Assembly (NCBI RefSeq): GCF_963853765.1
Contig: NC_088858.1
Coordinates: 6,324,001-6,388,000, forward strand
Length of the DNA stretch: 64,000 nucleotides
Source: Magallana gigas
Taxonomy: Eukaryota
Reading direction: 5' to 3'
The translations under genes were made by a program, and so were the position numbers. The notes beneath the pieces were generated by a model. That model was given only the letters and a program-made list of their open reading frames with translations, did not search any database and was not told where the DNA came from. Of the stretch, positions 41,641 through 54,301 are shown piece by piece (positions within the stretch are counted from its first letter, which is position 1; every line of letters begins with the position of its first letter).

Positions 41641-42504
41641 GGCAACAGTTTGAATTCCAGCAAGCCATTTCCTGATAATAAAGCTTTTCTAAATAATAAA
41701 ACAGTAGTGAAGGAGGTGCACGGCTATACACGCAATGTTGTTATAAATATTCTAGAAAAGCTCTTTGCACGTGGTAAGAATGAAGATGGAAAGACATTGC
41801 ATTTTTTACTCTATGGAATAGAGCGTATAGCAGCAAGGAAATATGCATTAAGACTTGCCTTTCAATAGGTTAAAGGAAAACTCTTCTAATTCCATTATTA
41901 TTACCAAACAAACAATCAAACAAAAGGAGATGCTTTCATGTGACAAAAATATTGATTCTCTTGACCTTAGTCTTTGATATCTTCTTAACTTAATCTCCAT
42001 GCAAATTAAATAATCGTGGACATTAGAAGAGCTAAATTCATCTTAACAGCTATATACGTGAATGTTCATTTTTCTGGCATGACATTATCATTTTTTTGTT
42101 ATCGAAAAAAGAGCAATGCCTGTCAAAAAATAAGTGTGAGAGAATGGTTTAAGATCTGGAAGAGAACAGTTGGGCTAACTGTGCTGGAACCCCGCACGTT
42201 AGTGGAGTATGTGAGATATCGGACTAGCTGTGCTGGTTTTCCGCACGTCATTGTCGATGTCATATTTTTAAAGATATCAGTTAATCAAGAATTTCAAAGT
42301 AGTACAAGTTACATTAAAAGACGCTTTTTTATGTAAAACTAAAATCATTTTTTTTTATCAATTCACTATAGTATTCACAATTCACAATTAACCATGGCAA
42401 ATAGTCAACACATTTTTGAAAATAAAACAATGAATAATCAACACTTACAGTAGTCTTATTATTTATATTGCACTTCATCACAGTATAAAAAAGTGTTAAA
42501 ATGT

Positions 42505-44128
42505 TCAGGCATATAAAGACATAAGGTGCTTTCGCTTATCAATTCCTATGTTCCCTCCACAAGCAACCACAACTACTTTCTTCCCGCTGAATCTCTCGGG
42601 GTTCTTCATGTAGGCACCAAGTGTCATGCCAGCCGCTCCTTCCACAACCTGATGGAACCAGAGCAAGATTGTGTTGAAAATTAAAAAGAAAACATCAATA
42701 GCATCAAACTAACAAGAATGTCCGAAATATTAAAGAACAGTCCACAAGCGAACATATTTGTAGGAAACATTAATATCTCTGACCAAGATGTCCATATTAT
42801 AGAAGCATAGGTAATCAAAGATTACAGAGCTTATATCACCCACATGAAGCGAACCCAACATCGCCCCCTTTTCTGAATATTAGATGGAGAGAGGATCAAT
42901 TCTTACCTTACAACCCTCACCCCTACCCAAACGATAGACCCATCTTGTGGTGATGTTGTAACATGAAGATTATGGCTTTCCCTATTTCCTCCTCATCAAC
43001 CAAAATCCAGTCATCCACGTATTCAGCACAAATAGGAAAAGTAATCTACATGAAGAAATATAGGAAACAGAGCGTATCTTTCAAATTCAAAATGAATATA
43101 ATACAATACACACTATAAACTGCATGCTACCGAGTTTTTGTCTACTCCTCCAGAAGTTCCGTCAGACAGCGTGTCCAGGGATTCTTTAAACACCCCCCTG
43201 CCTGCCTTCACACTCTCGTACATCACTTTGGAATTCTTGGGCTGCCATCCTATTATCTACAAACAATGGCTGGATTTAAAATTATGAATTTATGTATTCA
43301 TAAACGTTACTGAAATAAAGATGACTTCTACTTACTTCTACAGATGTTCGGACTTGTTTGACGTATCTGGATATTCCAGATAACAAGCTTCCGCCCTCCG
43401 ACAGGAACTAAAATACAGCCAACATCAGGACAGCTCTCTAAAATCTCTATTCTGTAAAATTTTATTTAAAAGATCACTTGCATATCATTTTATTGAATTG
43501 AACCTTTTAAGCCTTTTCAAAGCTTTTTATTACATTTGCTGTTTTCCAGAACAGCACGTGAACTTTTTACACATGTTTTATTGCAAACTCGTTTTTGAAG
43601 GAATTTTTTTACAGTAATCAGTACACACCTTGAGGTTGTTCTTCATATCATGACTTGTTAATTGCCGCAGTATTTCCAAGTATATTGAGTATTAAATCAA
43701 CATATATCTGTTATGGATCAAAATTCATTGAATCTGGGGCTATTATGGATCGGATACCTTAATAAGGCCTTTGATAGTACACAGTTTACTACAGAACAAC
43801 TTGCCCAACGGTTCCACAGCCAGCTATGATATCTACGTCATTGTATGATGACACAAATTCTTTTTGCTCCCTCTAGATAAATATAAACAAAAAAGATTAT
43901 GATAATTATTCTGATTTTCTAGTATTCAGTATGTTTCTGCATCTTTTGGCACCAATACACGTGGTTCACCTTTGCGTCGGCTCTAGCCTCGTTTTCAGCC
44001 TCCACATAGTCGTTTCCACGTAGCACCACTTGAACCCCTCTGTCCAGGAGAGCCTGCTTCTTGTGTTCGTCCACACATTGCCTACAGTATACAGTCAATG
44101 GAATACTCAAGGTCCCTCTGGCTTCAAC
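42505..44128 (-). pseudogene. Tandem partial duplicate (exons 3-8) of the dehydratase gene, pseudogenising
   Basis: Exon-by-exon homology with 45289-47512, including the 3' UTR. It has a +1 insertion in the GGGG loop exon (about 43395), a GC exon-4 donor, and an exon-7 donor GT changed to AT (about 42942). No copies of exons 1-2 found. Confidence 0.85.
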
Positions 44129-45288
44129 CTGTTAAACAAATATATTGGTTTTGGGATAAGATCTGAGGCAACTTGTTATAGAGTACACTGTTAGATAGCT
44201 GTTATGCTTTTGATCCGTTCACGAAAATTACTTTACATTGTAAAAGCTTTACACTAGCAGGTCGCAGGATCTAAGAGTTCTCAAAGCAAGTTCGCTAGAA
44301 ATATTAGGATTTCATTCCAGTTATTCTTTTATCAATAAATGATACTCGTTTCTTCACTGATTTTAAGATAATTTTCAAACTAATACATTTAAACTTTAAT
44401 TGTTGTAAACCATTTCATAATTAGTATCAATATCAGACAAAAACAGATTAGTTGTACTGTCCTTGGGTGTTCCCACTGATGTCCACCTCTTGATCGTCAT
44501 ATACATTGTATAGGCCTATACAACTGTCTCCAAAATGTCTTATGCCATCCAATATTTCCGCAGAGTTTTTATTTTTAGATAGAAAGGCGTTTCAAAGGTA
44601 AAATCTTGGGATTGTTTTACACATTTATGAATGAACATCGTTTTAACCCATGGGTAATTATGAATATCAAATAATTTATGAAAATATTGCATAAATATCT
44701 TAAGACAGTAAAATCATGTGCATAGCATTGTATAAATGTTGATGTGCCTGCCTTTCAATCTTGCGTCTATGGTCTATGGGATTCCATTACAGCGGGCACA
44801 GCTCTACACCTTTTTCCGGGGATGATGGCTCCTCCTCCAGATCTATTCCTGATATGAAGACATCAGTGACTTTGGATGAAAGGTGTCCTCACTTCTGGAC
44901 GCCAAGAATGCCGTTCACTGGTGAGCAAATGGTTTCGCATTGTTTTGTCCGAGACGTATTCCAATAGATACCGATATCTTAGTTCAGACAGTCTAGAGAT
45001 TCCTGATTCTGATATTTGTGTTATTTATTTATTTAAATAAAACTAATAACTTTTAGAGGATACAGCTTATAGAGGAATTAGAGGATACTGATGGGTTATA
45101 AAGGTCAAGTAATTCATGTAAGTTTAATAGCCAGTTTTTGAAGACAAAACTAAGAACATTTTATTCTTTTATTTTTTAAACATGGCAAATAGTCAACATA
45201 CATTTATGAAAAAAAAATAATCAACAGTAGTCTTATCATTTATATTGCACTTCAGCACCAATATAAAAAATAAAGTGTGTTAAAATGT

Positions 45289-48200
45289 TCAGGTATATAA
45301 AGACATAAGGTGCTTTAGCTTTTCGATTCCTATGTTCCCTCCACAAGCAACCACAACTACTTTCTTCCCGCTGAATCTCTCGGGGTTCTTCATGTAGGCA
45401 CCAAGTGTCATGCCAGCCGCTCCTTCCACAACCTGATGGAATCAGAGAAAAATTGTTTTAAAAATTTATAAAAAACAATAGCATGGAATTCAAAATAATG
45501 ATTACCGTAATTAAATAAATGGTATTTGCATTCATGCATTTGGGAATCTTGATCCCAACTTTAATATAACTTCAGTATTTAGAATAAAATTTGGTTTATT
45601 TCAATAATTCTAATCTATTGATCTATTCATTTCAAAATTTTGGACAGATAGGTGCTGCCCACTACTTATGAACTTTTGAGGGAAAGGCTCAACTCATATT
45701 TCACAACCCCTTATCCCTACCAAAACAATAGACCCACCTTGTGGTGATGTTGCAACATGAAGATTATGGCTTTCCCTATTTCCTCCTCATCCACCAAAAT
45801 CCAGTCATCCACGTATTCAGCACACAGAGGGAAAGTGATCTAAATAGGGAAATATCAGATAAAAAATCTCCCTTTAAAACAAATACATGTAATATAGAAG
45901 ACAAAACAAACTATAAATAGAATGCTACCGAGTTTTCTTCTACTCCTCCAGCTGTTCCTTCTGACAGGGTGTCTAGAGATTCTTCAAGCACGATCCTGCC
46001 TGCCTTCACACTCTCAAACATCACTTTGCTATTCTGGGGTTGGCATCCTATTATCTACGATAAAAGATTAAACTACTGTTACAAAAGGATTGTGACTGGT
46101 TTTATACTGAAAATAAAGAAAATTACTGAAAATATGAGAATATTATTGAAGAAAAAGAGATAAAATGGAAAACAAAAAGTTAAAAAGGTTCCCAGTGACC
46201 TCTACAGAAGGTCGGACTTGTTTGACATATCGGGCTATTCCAGATATCAATCCTCCACCTCCAACAGGAACTAAAATACAGTCAACATCAGGACAGCTCT
46301 CTAGAATCTCTTTCCTGTAAGAATATTTAAGATTATACAAGCTTATATTAATACTACGTTACACATAAATTCCTTGATATTTAAAGATTTTAATACGTAA
46401 AATTTTGGATGTACATGTAGAACATTTCTTGAGCTTATCAAAGTTTTTATATATGTAGTCAAAATGCTAGTAAACAGAATTTTTTTTATTGATAATCAAC
46501 ATATGACAGAAGAATGTTTTAATCAATGACAGGCTACTAATTAGACACTTGTGCATTTTAAGGTTGTTCTTGACACACAAAAAAATTGTTTGGTTTGAAA
46601 ATGAATATAATAAAAACTTAGACAAAATTCTTAAGAAATCTTTGGAAAATTTTGCAATTAAAACAAATTCTTTTATAAAGAATATTTCAAATTGATTTCA
46701 TGTCCTTCAAATTGTTTCATAGTTTAAAAATGTAACAATACATGTACAAAATGACACAAGTGTTTGAATGAATTTATTTCTACATAAATCTTTTATTTAC
46801 AATCTGATTATTTTAGAAGTTTCAAAGAAGGTATTTTATTTCATGCCTCAATAGCCACAAATGGTAGTCATGAGGAAAAATACATGTATATAGGGAATTT
46901 GCTATGCTTATTATTATGAATTTGTTGTATGGAAATAAAAAATTATGGGTATAGTGAAGTAAATCTAGTGGTCCCTAGGACTTCACTATATGTATAACAG
47001 TTTTTTACAGCAAATATATTGTATTTATGTGAAGTAAATCTAGTGGTCCCTAGGACTTCACTACATGTATAACAGAGTTTTACAGCAACTAGATGAATGT
47101 CCTTTAAATTTTCAATTATTAATTGCAAGCAAGTTTTTTAGTCTAAATGAATATTTGAGCTTTATACTGATTTTACAAAGTTTACAATACAACAACTTAC
47201 CCAATGGTTCCTTGGCCAGCTATGACATCTACATCATTATATGGTGACACATATTCTTTTTGCTCCCTCTAGAAAATAAAACAAAGGATTACAAAAATAA
47301 CTCTGATATATTTCATGTTTCTGAATTTTCTGGCATCACTCCACATAGTTTACCATTGCGGCGGCTCTAGCCTCGTTCTCAGCCTCCACACAGTCGTTTC
47401 CGTGTAGCACCACTCGAACCCCTCTGTCCAGGAGAGCCTGCTTCTTGTGTTCGTCCACACCTCGCTGACAGTACACAGTCACCGGGATACCCAGGGTCCC
47501 TCCAGCCTCAACCTGTCAACACCAGTGAAGTTGTGTCAGGGTATGATTTGAGGCAATTTGTAATATATCAAACTGTTAAAATACAGTTGTCAGACTTCCT
47601 TTGAAAGGCACACAAAAAACAATATATAAAGAATACCATATGCTAATCAATGTGGATCTACATGTAATTATAGTCAGACCAAGTTCACAAAAATTGTTAT
47701 GATTTAATATAACATATGTCACCAGGTTAATAGGTGTGTGACTGTCAGTCAATATATCGGGTCTTAATAGCTCAGTGGTTAGAGCGCTAGCACGGTATGC
47801 CAGAGGCCCTGGGTACAAGTCCCTGTTGAGACTTGACTATTCACCACCTGTTACACATATATTACAGGCATGGATCTAGCCCCCCCCCCCCCCATCACCT
47901 TTGGGAAATCTAAATTCATATCAAAATAACCAAAAAAGGCCTTGGTGCCCCCACCCAAAGAAAAACATTCTGGGCCAAAGAATGCATTTCTAGCAGTTCT
48001 CCTTATTCTAATAAATGGGGCATCTTCACTGATTTTAAAATTTATCATCAACATGATCAATGTTCAAACTTGAAGATTATGATTCAGTCGGTGCGAGTAA
48101 ACCATTTTACAAATAGCATCAGAAATATTGAATTTACACAAGCCATGCCATGGTTTCCAGAGGATGCTGTGATTATTCCTGAGTGTTTGACTACGTCTCC

Positions 48201-49064
48201 AGCAGATGACAACTTCAACAGCTTGTTGAAAGCACCACGAATCTTAAATGATCCCGTCAACTGTTCACTTTCTAAAAGGATGAAAAAAATATGCTTTTCT
48301 TAATGCATTGAAGTGAATGCCAAGTTCATCATGTTTGATACTAAGAAATGCTTTAGATGACTTGTGCCTGGTGAAAATTTTTTGGCTCTAGTTCAAATGT
48401 CATCAACTCAGGTTATGTACATGTATCATTTCTATGTAGACATTTGGAGGCATCTCATTTATTCTTTTTTCAGGCATTTCATATTTAAAAATTATCTAGA
48501 TTGATCATTTATATCAAAATTATTGCATATTTAAAATCGAAAGTTATAAAAGGGTTTCATGGAAATGTCTTTTAATTGCTCATGTTATAGGAATTTAATT
48601 CTCATCAATTTTTTTTAAAAAATATGTCTGCTTCAGTATGGTATGGATGAATAATTGTTCTCTCAATGTAATAAACAGACCTACATATAACTGCTGTTTG
48701 ACACAAACTGATCAAAACTCAGAGTCTTATTAAAATGGCGCTAAATCTAATACAACAGAATGCTTACAGGAGAAACAGACAATCAAGGAATGCATACTTT
48801 CAGCAAGGGCATGCATAAAAACAAACAAGACTAAGATATAAACTAAAATTCATAATGTTGACCCACCTGAATCAAAATATTAATTACAGTATAGCAGAGA
48901 GTACATTCCTTAAACAAGATGCAATTAGACATACCCAGTTTGATGAAGACTTTGCAGTCAATGCTTTGTTTACTGAGGGGAATGGAGTAAGTGAGAGGCG
49001 TCTTGTAGATATATTGTTGGATCCTCCCATGTGCTTCCAATGTTCTCTGAACCAAACTTTCCAT
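45289..49064 (-). CDS. PLP-dependent L-threonine/serine ammonia-lyase (fold type II, serine racemase/TdcB family), about 325 aa, 8 exons
   Basis: Exons 49064-48935, 48271-48138, 47512-47354, 47268-47201, 46314-46200, 46054-45929, 45839-45738 and 45432-45289 join in phase. Motifs: TGSFKIRGA (PLP lysine), TASSGNHG, YVSPYNDVDVIAGQGTIG, VPVGGGGLISG, VVEGAAG, CGGNI. Confidence 0.93.
46954..47089. repeat. 75-bp tandem duplication containing a small hairpin
   Basis: GTGAAGTAAATCTAGTGGTCCCTAGGACTTCACT..TATAACAG occurs twice with period 75. Confidence 0.85.
47717..47855 (+). mobile_element. 139-bp solo LTR containing a tRNA-like sequence (Helenus-like TRIM)
   Basis: TGTCAC...GTTACA termini with a 4-bp TSD CATA on both sides. 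Internal A-box TAGCTCAGTGGTTAGAGC and B-box-like GGGTACAAGTCCC. Confidence 0.75.
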
Positions 49065-49553
49065 AGTCTCTCTGTAAGCCGTCAGCTAAAATAGATTTCA
49101 AAAGTATGGTGAACATTGCCAAAAACAACATTACTTGTTATATTTGTATTTGCCTATCTATGGAAATACATGCATATTGGATTGATAATTCTCATTCACA
49201 ATGTAGATTTTAATAAACAGTAGGAAAACTAATTAGTAAATGTAATTCATGTTCTCAAAGACAACAACATAACAGACAGAAATTACACAAAAAGTGATTA
49301 TCATTACCAGCTTGGTATAGTGAACATAATTCATTCTATCATTAATGTTTTTTAATAGTCCTGTTTTTTGACAAAAATTCAGATAATTTTTAACAACAGT
49401 CAACAGTGTCACCAATTAACTGGCAAGAGCTTTCTTAGCAACAGACTACAATTTCAACTTTTGGACAGTGAGCATAAAACCCACCCAAAACTAAATTGTT
49501 CTGTTCCTCTCACTTAAAAGATTTTTTTTGTGTTAATAAAATGTTAACAATAC

Positions 49554-51581
49554 TTATTTTATGGTACTACATGTATTACAAAAATAAATTGGTTTTAATA
49601 GTCTCTTCTGTTTTACTTGTGCATCATAATCTGTAAATGGTGGCTCTGTCTTTATACTGGTAGGATCGCATTCCATGATCTGGGCTTCACTGTGTGTTGC
49701 TACTGCTTCTATCTGCGATGTCTCCCAAGTGGTTGTGGAGCCAGCTATGATAGTAGGCCTATCTACCCTTGAAAATATCAACAATCGGGGGGTAGGTACT
49801 GGATTTACACAGAGCGGCTGGATGATTTGTGTGTCACTTACTCGACGAAGAACATATTCACTAATGCTCTGAACAGGCAAGTGTCCTGCGCCTGTCATTG
49901 TTTGCGAGTCATGCGTACACTTTGATTGAATTGATGCCCCGGTCACTCTTATGGATTGGTTTGAATACACTCGAGACAAGTTGGTGGCTCTGCTCAAAGA
50001 ACTGAAAAATGTGCTTAACTTCTTCTCACCGACTGGGAGATTGCAGTACCACACTGATTCAGAATCTGTGATGTTTTCTTTAGGTCGCTGCCAAAGTCTG
50101 TAGATGAAAAATATTCATCCTTTAAACTTGACCTTTATAACATATCACAATCTAATTAAACTCTTACCTCGCTCTTTGTTATCTGGTTGCCACTCGCAAC
50201 AGAGTGAGATAAAAGGTCTGATTTTAATTCGATTGTATGAGATCATGGACCCCCTCTCAGTTACTACAGTACTGCTCTTTTGCAACAAATTGAAAGAGTA
50301 TGGTATCATAATACAATGACAATTGTTAAATCTTTGATTTAATTATCTACCAAAACACTTCACCATAATGAAGTAAGGTATGATATGAAATTATGACAAT
50401 TGTTTAATCTACGATATAATTATCTACCAAAACACTTTACCAAAATGGATCAATTTGCCCTTCAAGAGAGCAGTATTCCACAGTTATCATAAAAGCATAC
50501 TGTGAAAGTATCATATTTAGCAGGTTCAATATTTGGCAGAAATGATTTTCAGCCAATTAGCGTGGATTTGATTTAGAGCGTTTCAGCATGTACCTATTTA
50601 CCTACATGTACTGACAGTATGACATTTGGTGATGTACTTGATATAGCAATTCCAAGCTGCATTCTGCCAAAAACACTAAATACAGTGTCATGAGATTATT
50701 CTACTGGTTTTTCAAAGCTGATCAACTTACTTATCACAGTTTGGATGTAGCTTCGATAAATACATCTCAAAAGAAAGAACTGGGCAATATTTGGATCCTG
50801 CAAAAAAAAAAAAAAAATTATAGTGCTCTATAGTCACAAATGATCTAATTTAAGAAATTTTCTGACTCAATTCAAAATTAAAATATAACCAACAATATAA
50901 ACCTTGAATTTCTGGCATTATCCCCGAGGAAGCTTCTTTGTTCACATGACAATTTTCTGTGAAATCATTTAAGTTTTTTGTTACAACTTTACGACCAGTA
51001 TTCTCATCTATTTCTACTCTGAATGTATTCTTGGTCATGGTATGCATGTTTTCTATTCCCCTTCGACAGAAAAACATTCGAATGTCAAACTGCACTTTGT
51101 TGAAGAGACCCCGTGGTGTGGCTATAGAAAGGTTATTACTTGTATACAGTAAGCTTAAGTCAGTGTCCGAAATAATAGGGTGATGAACTTCCACCATCCC
51201 CAGTCTTTTGGCTTCAGCTAACACAGCTTTAAAGCAAGTGTTGCTCTCTATAAACAAGGAATCCTTCACTATGTCAATTTTCCTGTTAAAAGGGGGCGAT
51301 TTTAAATATCTGCTGATTCCATGGCGGATCGTCTCCATTGAATTTACTTTGTAGTATGTTCCATCCTCTCTTCGCAAGTCCATGTAAAATCGTCCCAACA
51401 TCTCATCCAGTTTGGCATTGTCAAATTCTTCAAAATTCTTACTTTCGCCTTGTACCTGTAGATAATCTTTAAAAATCTTTGCAGCACCTTTGTTTGCTTT
51501 TAATGTTTTCTTGCTGTTTATTTGCATACGTTTTTTATCCCTCTCCTCCGCAGAGGTTTGAGCGAACCTGGACGCTGCCAT
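49554..51581 (-). CDS. Crypton/DUF3504-type tyrosine-recombinase-like protein, 3 exons (about 429 aa if unspliced after exon 3)
   Basis: Exons 51581-50903, 50797-50731 and 50097-49554, with GT-AG junctions in phase. Motifs: LGRFYMDLRREDGTYYK, FFCRRGIENM, CPVLSFEMYLSKLHP, LWQRP, VWYCNLPVG, YSNQSIRVTG, AGHLPVQSISEY. The 3' end is uncertain. Confidence 0.85.
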
Positions 51582-52313
51582 TCAATCTGTTGCAGACACA
51601 AAGGGACACTACTCCAGTTTATCAAATATTACGGAACGCGGTTTCCGTAATAAATGTTTTGTTTGGTCAGTTTTAGTAGCCGAAAGGAAAACGGTTACGT
51701 TAGATAATTGAATTCAATAAAATTGTTTTTTTGTGAAATCAAGAATATATAAATCACATTTGAACCGTTGAAAGTTTTAAATTCAAGTTTTTATAAATAT
51801 ATTTCTTTCAATTCAATTCAGTTCATCGACATCATCATGTTGGCACTGTATACTCACTACAGTCAAATGAAATCAAATGACAGACAAAAGAATATTATAA
51901 CAAAAAGGTTATTAACATAAAGGTTATTATATAGTTATAGACAAACCAATGATACAGAAGTCAAGAGTAGAATGCTTTTTGGTGTTTTAATTCGGTCTTT
52001 GTCAGTCAACATTGTTATAACATCGGGAAACCACAATTATCTAATTATACCTGATTATACTCTGATTATACAGAGACACTTGCCTTAGATTATGACCGGA
52101 TATAGCCTATACAAAAACCAAACAACGCCTTCGGCAATAACATCCTGAATAATGCAGCCCATAACGCATGTACGTTACGCCGGTCGCCGGGAACTTGAAA
52201 ACAACTTGAACGCACCAATTCACGCAACTGAACAAACGTTCAAGCATCACGTGTTCGCGAATACAAGACATCACGATGTTTAGATCTGTTGCTGTTCCGA
52301 ACAATATAGATTG

Positions 52314-52437
52314 AATGATTTATTTTTGACGTCGTCGTGTCAATAATTAACTGCCGTCAGGTGATGAGCAGACAAATTGAATAACGCGCGTTAGCTGACG
52401 GCAGTTATTGACACGACGACGTCAAAAATAAATCATT
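52314..52437. repeat. Inverted repeat with about 43-bp arms and 34-bp spacer
   Basis: AATGATTTATTTTTGACGTCGTCGTGTCAATAA(TTAA)CTGCCGTCAG ... CTGACGGCAGTTATTGACACGACGACGTCAAAAATAAATCATT. Confidence 0.88.
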
Positions 52438-53800
52438 TAATGCTTATATTTACATTCCCTTACTGATGAAATCAATTGTTTAGAAATAAATCGATATAAA
52501 GTGCAGATCACGGAGGGAGTAAATTAGTAACAGCAAGAACAGCTGATTTGTAAAACCGGTTTAAACTGGTTTTCCCAGGGACCGTTGAGCATGAAAATAT
52601 AATCCATAACTATTGAAATGTTGCTTTTAACAATAAAGTCAACTGTTTTGTTGAATAATTATAAAACATGGTGTTTTGACAACATTTATGAAATACATTT
52701 TTAACCGATAACATAGAAATCACTGTTTGAGAACTAATTATGTAAATTACATGTAAATTCATACGCAGTGAATAGATGTTGCATTTAGAGGCATTTAAAC
52801 ATCACGGAATCTAATGGAAAAACACAGTAGAATGTAAATATTTTTGATTTGACAGACCACCACAGTTCCGCAGGCATATTTCGTTTCTGGAATCAAAGAA
52901 AATTAAAGTTCCAGGCACAGTGATAGTGTACATGTATTTTACTACAGATGTCGTTGCTTTCCTTGCCACTGAAAGTCTTTTGATTGTTGCTATATTATAA
53001 AATACTTAAAACACTTACTCTAAAACTTACATGTACATTTACTTTCTTTCCCCAGTGTGCTTTGTTATAATTGGTAGTTATAGTGATCTGACGTGAACTT
53101 TCACTTAATAATTTAGGGGTAGGTGAAGGTATATTACAGCAATAAGATGCTTTCTTTTTTGGTGTTTCATGCCGATATGAAGGTAACAGACTGGAGAAAA
53201 AAATCCGCTTACGTCAGTGCTCTCATTGTAGCTTTAGTTTCGATTGATCAAGAATAATCCACACAACGGTCAACAGTTAAAGTACAAAGAAGACATCAAT
53301 GAACGAGTTAAAAATCATTTATCATAGCTACTATAGATAGAATTAAATTTGTCATTTAACAACGCCAGTTTAGAATGCGTAATATTATTCTTACGCCGAC
53401 TGCTGGATCGCGTGAATTTCTGTCTTATCATCGACTATCGTAGAAAAAAAATATAGAGAAAAACTACTTACATGTAATGGATGTCAAAATATTAAATTTA
53501 AGAGTTAGTCTTAGTCAAATAAAGAAATAAGTTCAGTAGCCATGTATGTTTAATGAATCATTCCGTATCATTTTTAAAACTTATGAATCCAAATTTCCAC
53601 GAAGAGCAACAGATCTGCAGCTAAACTTCCTGCAATACACTGGTTGTAGCGCAAAATCGAACATACCCAACTTCGCAAAAACGCAGTCGCGCAAGACGTC
53701 GCTGCGTTGTCATTGCACACAACGCCAAGTGGTACGAGCGCAATGGCGTGTTCTGTGATTTGTGACAGCGTGTTTTCCTCAACTATTGAAAGCACTACTC

Positions 53801-53871
53801 CATCGTCGGAACCCACGGGTTTTGTACCCGTTACACTGCTTTCAAAGAAAAATCCGTGGGTTCCGACAATG
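53801..53871. mobile_element. 71-bp mini-MITE with 9-bp TSD
   Basis: 18-bp TIR CAT(C/T)GTCGGAACCCACGG. GCACTACTC is duplicated at 53792-53800 and 53872-53880. Confidence 0.85.
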
Positions 53872-54301
53872 GCACTACTCGTTCACCATACTTTAAAAGG
53901 CTTTTTTAGACCGTCGACGACTTGACAGGGACGAGTTGTCTATAGATATACTTTTAAAAGCCGCCGCTGCGCCTCGTTTATGAATCCAAAACAAAGTGCT
54001 ACATTTCATTTCTACTGTCTGTCTTACGGTGTGTAGTCACATGTCGTCGAAGTTCCTGTCACTTACCTAAAAAAGATAGCAATATACAAACCTGCTGCTC
54101 TGTCTATATCACCCGCAACGATCAGATACCTATGTACACTAAAACTTTTAACTAGAGGCCCATGGTCCACATCACTCATGTGGTAGCAGTGTACATAACT
54201 AGCTTTATATACAATTTATCAAAACATTGAGAAATGTTCAGTTGCATTTTGATATTTTAAAAAATGCACATTTGTGAAATTTTTTTTATATGATCTACGA
54301 A

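What the first reader, a model, noticed from the sequence alone, without database searches (positions are those of the whole stretch)
49064..50097. Possible in-frame splice fusion of the recombinase-like gene to the PLP dehydratase
Seen: the dehydratase ATG exon is preceded by an acceptor (TCTATTTTAG, exon start 49085) and 21 stop-free in-frame bases (LTAYRET-MESLVQ). Upstream on the same strand, the YR frame has a strong phase-0 donor CGA/GTAAGT at 49841, five codons after the catalytic-Tyr position, and a second phase-0 donor CAA/GTAAAA near 49616. Either would join YR to the enzyme in frame, giving about 670-740 aa. I saw no canonical AATAAA on the minus strand between the YR stop and the acceptor, only ATTAAA variants. 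Inference: this could be a chimeric DNA-binding plus metabolic-enzyme protein, or a TE-donated promoter or 5' exons. I know of no such described fusion. Phase agreement alone has about a 1-in-3 chance.
Basis: partly seen in the sequence, partly recalled or inferred. Interest (0 to 1): 0.72.

Follow-up and report, generated by a model that had tools for sequence, protein, structure and literature searches.

The report
Recombinase–dehydratase fusion gene in oyster
In the Pacific oyster, a transposon-derived recombinase-like gene lying in the first intron of a threonine/serine dehydratase gene is spliced in frame onto that enzyme, giving a conserved 741-residue hybrid protein, while the enzyme is also made alone from an upstream promoter.

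Summary

- **Splice seen in RNA.** The stronger-looking donor at 49842 has no RNA support.
- **Predicted product.** The 11-exon open reading frame gives 741 aa. It is 100% identical to RefSeq XP_011428755.3, "uncharacterized protein [Magallana gigas]". The same model exists in C. angulata. A 742-aa version from a third lineage (dS about 0.2) keeps the junction.
- **Assembled transcripts.** Single 2.3-kb RNA contigs cover every exon.
- **N-terminal half.** It is a Crypton/DUF3504 module with a Cre-like fold. It is single-copy here and is under purifying selection (dN/dS 0.16). It has lost the family-conserved His of the HxxR motif and three other conserved residues.
- **C-terminal half.** It is a complete TdcB-type PLP threonine/serine dehydratase.
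- **Other isoforms.** Two RNA contigs splice a non-coding exon at 54126-54092 to the same acceptor and encode the enzyme alone (325 aa). One run retains the 49086-49616 intron, which gives the recombinase-like protein alone (429 aa).
- **Closest precedent.** Vertebrate KCTD1 isoform b arose from a Crypton inserted upstream of a host gene.

I found no paper on this gene. The scan's only other note lies on this same stretch, not on other DNA. There is no long-read and no protein-level evidence yet.

The parts
54092..54126 (-). Non-coding first exon of the dehydratase-only transcript. This is the minimum extent. The donor is CAG|GTTTGT at 54091, and a TATA-like tatataaag lies near 54210.
   Evidence: RNA contigs L020 and L021 begin with this sequence spliced to 49085, with an in-frame TAG upstream of the ATG. 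Sequence read.
49086..54091 (-). Intron of about 5 kb in the dehydratase-only transcript. It contains the whole recombinase-like gene in the same orientation.
   Evidence: Junction 54092|49085 in L020 and L021.
50903..51644 (-). Recombinase-like exon 1. The ATG is at 51581 and the coding part is 51581-50903. The transcript 5' ends lie at about 51591-51644.
   Evidence: RNA contigs reach 51644, 51599 and 51591 followed by adapter. L017 starts at 51595. ORF.
50731..50797 (-). Recombinase-like exon 2 (67 nt).
   Evidence: Spliced in X1, X10, X7, L017 and L018. Boundaries are GT..AG.
49617..50097 (-). Recombinase-like exon 3 up to the fusion donor. It carries NQSIR (His to Gln), GHLP and Tyr330, then a tail predicted to be disordered.
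49836..49841 (-). It lies in phase 0 but is not seen in use.
   Evidence: The sequence is present. No joint from it appears.
49086..49616 (-). Alternatively removed 531-nt GT..AG intron. When retained it supplies the ancestral 20-codon tail and the stop (49554-49556) of a 429-aa recombinase-like protein.
   Evidence: Joint 49085|49617 in X1, X10 and X20. It is retained in X7 record 12, and at low depth in X1 and X10. The tail is homologous to the transposon copies.
48935..49085 (-). Shared acceptor exon. It holds the 21-nt in-frame leader (49085-49065), the dehydratase ATG at 49064 and the first 43 codons of the enzyme.
48138..48271 (-). Dehydratase exon 2, with the PLP-lysine motif SFKIRGA and the SSGNHG motif.
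47354..47512 (-). Dehydratase exon 3.
47201..47268 (-). Dehydratase exon 4.
46200..46314 (-). Dehydratase exon 5, with the GGGG phosphate-binding loop.
45929..46054 (-). Dehydratase exon 6.
45738..45839 (-). Dehydratase exon 7.
45159..45432 (-). Dehydratase last exon. The stop codon is at 45289-45291 and the 3' UTR reaches at least 45159.

Best explanation
This is one real chimeric gene of the Pacific oyster.

Origin (inferred). A Crypton-type tyrosine-recombinase gene landed, in the sense orientation, in the 5'-UTR intron of a threonine/serine dehydratase gene. It kept its own promoter and has no canonical poly(A) signal.

Splicing (shown). A donor 20 codons before the recombinase's ancestral stop (exon end 49617) is spliced to the host's exon-2 acceptor (49085). 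Both are in phase 0, and the 21-nt host leader has no stop codon. The mRNA therefore encodes a 741-aa protein with three parts:
- residues 1 to about 312: a folded, Cre-like, transposon-derived module;
- residues 313 to 416: a segment modelled with low confidence (pLDDT below 50), read as a flexible linker;
- residues 417 to 741: a complete TdcB-type PLP dehydratase.

Two other products (shown at RNA level). The enzyme alone (325 aa) comes from an upstream promoter and a non-coding exon at about 54.1 kb. The recombinase-like protein alone (429 aa) results when the 49086-49616 intron is retained.

Conservation (shown). The fusion is kept in three Magallana/Crassostrea lineages. Its recombinase half is under purifying selection and has lost family-conserved active-site residues.

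Function (inferred). The N-terminal module no longer transposes. It most likely serves as a DNA-, chromatin- or protein-binding or regulatory appendage that gives the enzyme a second promoter and a second location or partner set. Which of these it does is not shown.
For: - RNA junction. The joint 49085|49617 has GT..AG ends. It occurs in RNA runs X1 (depth 50.5, against 7.75 for the unspliced path) and X10 (33.3 against 4.43), and in one raw poly(A) read of X20 with 45 nt on the shorter side.
- Full-length contigs. L017 and L018, 2.3-kb RNA contigs from two further runs, cover all 11 exons from 51595 to 45209.
- Database models. My spliced prediction (741 aa) is identical to XP_011428755.3 of M. 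gigas. C. angulata XP_052701477.1 differs at 9 residues. The 90%-identity cluster has 107 members, most of those listed being 741 or 742 aa from Logan RNA assemblies.
- Third lineage. The 742-aa form is 93% identical, keeps the junction in frame although 4 of the 7 leader residues differ, and is not encoded in this genome.
- Selection. dN/dS is 0.16 for recombinase residues 1-335, 0.38 for the tail and 0.08 for the enzyme, at dS about 0.2.
- Transposon origin. More than 150 family matches occur in the genome. Four copies of a 2.18-kb unit are 98% identical to one another and have the same two intron positions. The window's copy is only 74% (exon 1) and 46% (exon 3) identical to them in protein.
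- Family and fold. Pfam DUF3504 scores above its cut-off. The model is Cre-like, and the nearest solved structure is QRICH1.
- Lost residues. K209E, H296Q, K322L and S323P are found only in the fusion lineage among 46 relatives.
- Enzyme half. It matches Pfam PALP over the full profile, and the NCBIfam model NF005292 from Met417 above its cut-off. The nearest solved structure is TdcB, 2gn0.
- Enzyme-only isoform. L020 and L021 show it with the exon at 54126-54092.
Against: - No long read shows one molecule from exon 1 to the stop. Logan contigs are assemblies.
- Only one raw read crosses the junction, at about 1% sampling of run X20.
- In run X7 the intron is retained and no fusion junction was seen, so use of the fusion splice varies.
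- There is no peptide or other protein-level evidence.
- Purifying selection on the recombinase half could act through the 429-aa protein made alone, not through the fusion.
- The leader and tail evolve fast.
- R174, R299, H321 and Tyr330 are kept, so residual recombinase chemistry is not excluded.
Confidence: 0.85

Rival explanations
1. The fusion mRNA is real, but the hybrid protein has no function of its own. The transposon-derived gene mainly donates a second promoter to the enzyme. The selection seen on the recombinase half acts through the 429-aa protein made when the intron is retained.
For: - Intron retention is the only form seen in run X7.
- The 21-nt leader (dN/dS above 1 on few sites) and the tail (0.38) are poorly constrained.
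- The linker region is modelled with low confidence.
- The enzyme is also made alone.
Against: - In X1 the junction depth (50.5) is about that of the recombinase exons (45.2). In X1 and X10 the spliced form exceeds the unspliced about sevenfold, so the fusion is the main fate of these transcripts there.
- The frame and the stop-free leader are kept in a lineage at dS about 0.2.
Confidence: 0.25
2. These are two independent neighbouring genes. The apparent fusion is read-through noise or a mis-assembled chimeric contig.
For: - Contigs built by k-mer overlap can join neighbouring genes.
- Read-through with the retained intron does occur.
Against: - The junction has exact GT..AG boundaries.
- It occurs in a raw read, in runs from different studies, and in a cluster of 107 sequences whose listed members are mostly full-length assemblies from different runs.
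- It is in RefSeq models of two species.
Confidence: 0.02
3. The recombinase gene is still an autonomous, active Crypton transposon that merely sits in the intron. Its splicing to the host exon is a side effect.
For: - A closely related family has four 98%-identical copies, so it was active recently.
- R174, R299, H321 and Tyr330 are kept.
Against: - This copy is unique in the genome and only 74% (exon 1) and 46% (exon 3) identical to the nearest copies in protein.
- Nucleotide similarity to the active copies is limited to coding parts, and its introns are enlarged.
- It has lost four family-conserved residues and no longer matches the Pfam Phage_integrase model.
- It sits in the same fused arrangement in three lineages.
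Confidence: 0.04

Closest known systems
Vertebrate KCTD1 isoform b, a Crypton-derived DUF3504 domain fused to a BTB/POZ domain (Kojima and Jurka 2011, PMC3212892)
   Same: - A Crypton copy inserted upstream of a host gene created a new transcript variant.
- The long isoform has the DUF3504 module at the N-terminus and the host domain at the C-terminus.
- A short isoform encodes the host domain alone.
   Different: - The host partner here is a complete metabolic enzyme, not a protein-interaction domain.
- The event is young, so far seen only within one oyster genus at dS about 0.2, whereas KCTD1b is over 500 million years old.
- The catalytic Tyr and both Arg residues are still present here, whereas the vertebrate DUF3504 genes have lost the catalytic Tyr and the second Arg.
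- A related transposon family looks recently active in the same genome.
Host-transposase fusion genes formed by splicing ('transposase capture', bioRxiv 10.1101/2020.05.07.082677)
   Same: A new protein architecture is assembled by splicing transposon-coded exons to host exons (abstract seen).
   Different: - From my own knowledge, the vertebrate cases mostly place host KRAB, SCAN or BTB domains at the N-terminus and a DDE transposase DNA-binding domain at the C-terminus.
- Here a tyrosine-recombinase element is N-terminal, brings its own promoter, and captures an enzyme.
QRICH1 in the Zincore complex with SEPHS1 (PDB 9hjt; Bianchi et al. 2025, cited in PMC13538652)
   Same: - QRICH1 is the nearest solved structure to the N-terminal module.
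- It is a Crypton-derived domain that works together with an enzyme-family protein.
   Different: - In Zincore the two are separate polypeptides, and the partner is a selenophosphate-synthetase paralogue.
- Here the link is covalent and the partner is a PLP dehydratase.
- No coregulator role has been shown for the oyster protein.
Catabolic threonine dehydratase TdcB (PDB 2gn0) and NCBIfam NF005292
   Same: The C-terminal 325 residues match over their full length and carry the PLP-lysine, SSGNHG and GGGG motifs.
   Different: None of the solved dehydratase relatives listed (311-533 aa) or the nearest Atlas dehydratase clusters carries a recombinase-like N-terminal extension.

Membership tests
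Crypton-type tyrosine recombinase / DUF3504 (PF12012) | Pfam DUF3504 match above the gathering score | tested here: met
   35.6 bits against a cut-off of 29.7, residues 143-282.
Crypton-type tyrosine recombinase / DUF3504 (PF12012) | Two-domain Cre-like fold | tested here: met
   The model has pLDDT mostly above 90 for residues 11-312. Foldseek hits are QRICH1 (E 3e-8) and many Cre structures (E about 1e-5, TM by target 0.53-0.62).
Crypton-type tyrosine recombinase / DUF3504 (PF12012) | Complete catalytic tetrad R-H-R-Y | tested here: not met
   R174, R299 and Y330 are kept. The His of HxxR is Gln at position 296, against His in 43 of 46 relatives. K209E, K322L and S323P are further changes specific to this lineage.
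Crypton-type tyrosine recombinase / DUF3504 (PF12012) | Mobile: several near-identical copies in the genome | tested here: not met
   This copy is unique, and the nearest copies are 74% identical in exon 1. A sister family does have four copies at 98% identity.
Fold-type II PLP threonine/serine dehydratase (TdcB-like, NF005292) | Full-length match to the family models above their cut-offs | tested here: met
   PALP scores 238 bits over profile positions 1-295. NF005292 scores 386.6 bits against a cut-off of 371, residues 417-737.
Fold-type II PLP threonine/serine dehydratase (TdcB-like, NF005292) | PLP-binding lysine motif, SSGNHG motif and glycine-rich phosphate loop | tested here: met
   SFKIRGA, SSGNHG and VGGGGLISG are present and align to TdcB.
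Fold-type II PLP threonine/serine dehydratase (TdcB-like, NF005292) | Deaminates threonine or serine | not testable with these tools
   Needs an enzyme assay.
Host-transposase fusion gene (KCTD1b type) | Transposon-derived and host domains joined in one reading frame by splicing | tested here: met
   The 49617|49085 junction is seen in RNA, and the 741-aa ORF is continuous.
Host-transposase fusion gene (KCTD1b type) | A host-only isoform from a separate promoter coexists | tested here: met
   L020 and L021 carry the exon 54126-54092 spliced to 49085 and encode 325 aa.
Host-transposase fusion gene (KCTD1b type) | Conserved between species under purifying selection | tested here: met
   Found in M. 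gigas, C. angulata and a third lineage. dN/dS is 0.16 for the recombinase half. Breadth beyond these three lineages was not tested.
Host-transposase fusion gene (KCTD1b type) | The fusion protein is made and has a function | not tested
   No proteomic or experimental data were available.

The most novel reading that the evidence does not exclude
The Crypton-derived module brings a PLP threonine/serine dehydratase to DNA, chromatin or transcription-factor partners. That would make a covalent counterpart of the QRICH1-SEPHS1 'Zincore' pairing. The enzyme would then act, or serve as a scaffold, in gene regulation, and alternative splicing would switch it between a free metabolic form and a tethered form.
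Probability: 0.15. Interest if true: 0.8.

Novelty: new member of a known kind. Interest (0 to 1): 0.5.

Why it matters
- It is a young and well-supported case of a host gene capturing a tyrosine-recombinase transposon by splicing.
- All three products are still made: the fusion, the enzyme alone and the recombinase-like protein alone.
- A related transposon family looks recently active in the same genome.
- This makes it a usable model for how fusions such as KCTD1b arise.
- It also offers a test of what a domesticated Crypton module does when attached to a metabolic enzyme.
- The gene is so far only a RefSeq 'uncharacterized protein'.

Tried and rejected
- First donor (49842). It is present and in frame, giving 666 aa, but no junction from it appeared in four runs. 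No 666-aa form was among the 15 cluster members listed out of 107.
- Apparent non-canonical joint 50100|50734. This is an aligner shift of 3 nt. Contig X10 record 8 ends at 50097, and the RefSeq protein has Lys249, which only the canonical 50731|50097 splice gives.
- Scan of JGI metagenome contigs with a 20-nt junction word. The single hit is a chance match with unlike flanks.
- Search for DUF3504 plus PALP in other taxa. None was found among about 340 fetched relatives or the nearest Atlas clusters. Other partners do occur in database models: BTB, KRAB, DDE transposase and zinc fingers. The searches were limited by query length and by candidate caps, so absence elsewhere is not shown.
- Ostrea edulis P0196. 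It ranked just below the fusion protein but is only 50% identical, so it is not an orthologue.
- Dehydratase paralogues for comparing the first exon. There are none, only a partial tandem copy.
- Literature. Searches for the accession, the run ids and oyster dehydratases found nothing on this gene.
- K209 as the catalytic lysine. I do not claim this. K198 and K202 in the beta-hairpin are better placed by spacing from R174, and both are kept.
Full report
**The observation**

Everything here lies on the minus strand. The dehydratase ATG (49064) is preceded by the acceptor TCTATTTTAG, so the exon starts at 49085. Twenty-one in-frame, stop-free bases (LTAYRET) lie between the acceptor and the ATG. 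A TAG sits immediately upstream in the unspliced sequence.

The recombinase-like frame has two phase-0 donors:
- CGA|GTAAGT, with the exon ending at 49842;
- CAA|GTAAAA, with the exon ending at 49617.

Either would join in frame, giving 666 or 741 aa. There is no AATAAA between the recombinase stop (49554-49556) and the acceptor, only ATTAAA at 49356 and 49214.

**RNA evidence**

I laid two oyster RNA contig sets (X1, X10), a third set that is spliced and therefore RNA (X7), and raw poly(A) reads (X20) on 47900-52300.

A joint 49085|49617 that skips 531 nt, with GT..AG ends, is present in three runs:

| Run | Fusion junction | Unspliced path | Recombinase exons | Dehydratase exons 1-2 |
|---|---|---|---|---|
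| X1 | 50.5 | 7.75 | 45.2 | 91.9 |
| X10 | 33.3, inside the 1003-nt dehydratase contig | 4.43 | 71-92 | 33.3 |
| X20 | 1 raw read, 45 nt on the shorter side | almost none | - | - |

- The X20 reads all have the first mate on the + strand, which fits minus-strand RNA.
- In X7 a 1422-nt contig runs through 50100-48935 unspliced. That run shows a retained intron and no fusion joint.
- No joint from 49842 was reported.
- The recombinase contigs end at 51644, 51599 and 51591 followed by adapter, which marks that gene's own 5' end.
- A joint listed as 50100|50734 is a 3-nt aligner shift of the canonical 50097|50731 splice. Contig X10 record 8 ends at 50097, and the database protein has the Lys that only the canonical splice gives.

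**Gene model and databases**

Splicing 11 exons gives an uninterrupted 741-aa ORF: 51581-50903, 50797-50731, 50097-49617, 49085-48935, 48271-48138, 47512-47354, 47268-47201, 46314-46200, 46054-45929, 45839-45738 and 45432-45289.

A profile search that included my exon-1 and exon-3 translations found P0286. It is 741 aa, carries DUF3504 plus PALP, and represents 107 sequences from Logan assemblies. Its cluster contains:
- XP_011428755.3, "uncharacterized protein [Magallana gigas]", identical to my prediction;
- XP_052701477.1 of Crassostrea angulata, with 9 differences;
- a 352-aa UniProt model, "L-serine ammonia-lyase", which starts inside recombinase exon 3 and contains the junction;
- 742-aa variants;
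- a 325-aa enzyme-only form.

Contigs L017 and L018, each 2.3 kb and from two further runs, cover all exons from 51595 to 45209 with exactly these junctions.

**A second promoter**

The contigs that encode only the 325-aa enzyme are informative.
- L020 and L021 begin with sequence from 54126-54092 spliced to the same acceptor, 49085. An in-frame TAG lies upstream of the ATG.
- That exon has the donor CAG|GTTTGT and a TATA-like box near 54210.
- L019 starts in the unspliced intron.

The recombinase-like gene therefore lies inside the 5-kb first intron (54091-49086) of the dehydratase-only transcript, in the same orientation. This isoform probably accounts for the extra dehydratase depth in X1. 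That point is an inference, because the exon lay outside the stretch I laid.

**The N-terminal half**

- Family size: the family has over 150 matches in this genome.
- Recently active relatives: four copies of a 2.18-kb unit are 98% identical to one another. Their introns are at the same two positions, and they have the canonical HSIRATGA and TGHKSVQSLSVY motifs.
- The window's copy: it is unique and is 74% (exon 1) and 46% (exon 3) identical to those copies in protein. It resembles them at nucleotide level only in coding parts.
- Origin of the donor: the 20 codons after the fusion donor align with the C-terminus of the transposon protein. The donor is therefore a site inside the ancestral coding region. 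The active copies read CCA|GTTGAA there, a poorer donor, with two extra codons.
- Family membership: Pfam DUF3504 is matched above its cut-off. Pfam Phage_integrase, which a transposon-like relative still matches, is not.
- Conserved residues: among 46 relatives only the two fusion orthologues have K209E, H296Q, K322L and S323P. R173, R174, R299, H321 and Y330 are kept.
- Fold: an AlphaFold model has high confidence over nearly all of residues 1-312 (brief dips at 206-217) and pLDDT below 50 for 313-416. Its nearest solved structures are QRICH1 in the Zincore complex and Cre recombinase.

**The C-terminal half**

- Residues 417-741 match Pfam PALP over the full profile. They match NCBIfam NF005292, "threonine/serine dehydratase", above its cut-off, starting exactly at Met417.
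- The nearest solved structure is Salmonella TdcB.
- The gene is single-copy, apart from a partial tandem copy.

**Conservation**

- The 742-aa form is not encoded in this genome. It is 93% identical and keeps the junction in frame, although the leader reads VTDNRKT instead of LTAYRET.
- Comparing L017 with L022 gives dS of about 0.2. dN/dS is 0.16 for recombinase residues 1-335, 0.38 for the tail, 0.08 for the enzyme and above 1 for the seven leader codons.
- Of the polymorphisms seen in the RNA runs, all four in exon 1 are synonymous. In exon 3, four are synonymous and five are not, three of the five lying in the tail.

**Interpretation**

The shown facts are the junction, the three transcript forms, the continuous conserved ORF, the transposon ancestry, the loss of conserved active-site residues and the intact enzyme half.

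The inferred points are:
- the order of events, namely insertion into an existing 5'-UTR intron followed by use and improvement of an internal donor;
- translation of the fusion;
- the role of the N-terminal module.

I favour a non-catalytic binding or regulatory role. Residual recombinase chemistry cannot be excluded, because three of the four tetrad residues remain.

**Comparison with what is known**

- The closest precedent is KCTD1 isoform b. There a Crypton inserted upstream of the host gene gave a long isoform (DUF3504 then BTB) beside a short host-only isoform (PMC3212892).
- The general mechanism is the capture of transposase exons by splicing (bioRxiv 10.1101/2020.05.07.082677).
- The QRICH1-SEPHS1 complex shows a Crypton-derived domain working with an enzyme-family protein (PDB 9hjt; PMC13538652). 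I treat this as a lead only.
- I found no DUF3504-PALP protein outside this cluster and no paper on the gene.

**Limits**

- There are no long reads.
- Only one raw junction read was seen, at about 1% sampling.
- There are no protein data.
- The species of the third lineage is unknown.
- More distant oysters were not examined.

Noticed in passing
window 42447-44128 (minus strand): Partial tandem copy of dehydratase exons 3-8, 81-94% similar to the real exons. It lacks exons 1-2, and its glycine-rich loop region is disrupted. It looks like a pseudogene.
   Followed up: partly
window 47760-47834 (+ strand): A tRNA-Thr(GGT)-like sequence inside dehydratase intron 2. I kept it out of the stretch given to the reads tools.
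   Followed up: no
window about 52320-52440: Inverted repeat of about 120 bp (hairpin) upstream of the recombinase-like gene. It may be a small non-autonomous element.
   Followed up: no
window 51865-51908: A 44-nt piece with very high RNA depth on both strands and loose ends on both sides in every run. It is probably a repeat expressed from elsewhere.
   Followed up: no
L025:4789-6965, with matching parts of L026, L027 and L028: Four copies, 98% identical, of a 2.18-kb Crypton-like unit with two short introns and intact HxxR, GHK and Y motifs. This looks like a recently active transposon family.
   Followed up: partly
proteins P0002, P0060, P0119, P0133, P0022, P0223, P0194: Database gene models in other animals join DUF3504 to BTB, KRAB, DDE-transposase or C2H2 zinc-finger domains. 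Whether these are real fusions or merged gene models was not checked.
   Followed up: no
fusion residues 417-741 (window 45289-49064): The enzyme half passes the cut-off of an NCBIfam model used for annotating bacterial and archaeal genomes. Its nearest structural clusters are bacterial, and it is closer to Salmonella TdcB than to animal serine racemases. Its deeper origin was not examined.
   Followed up: no
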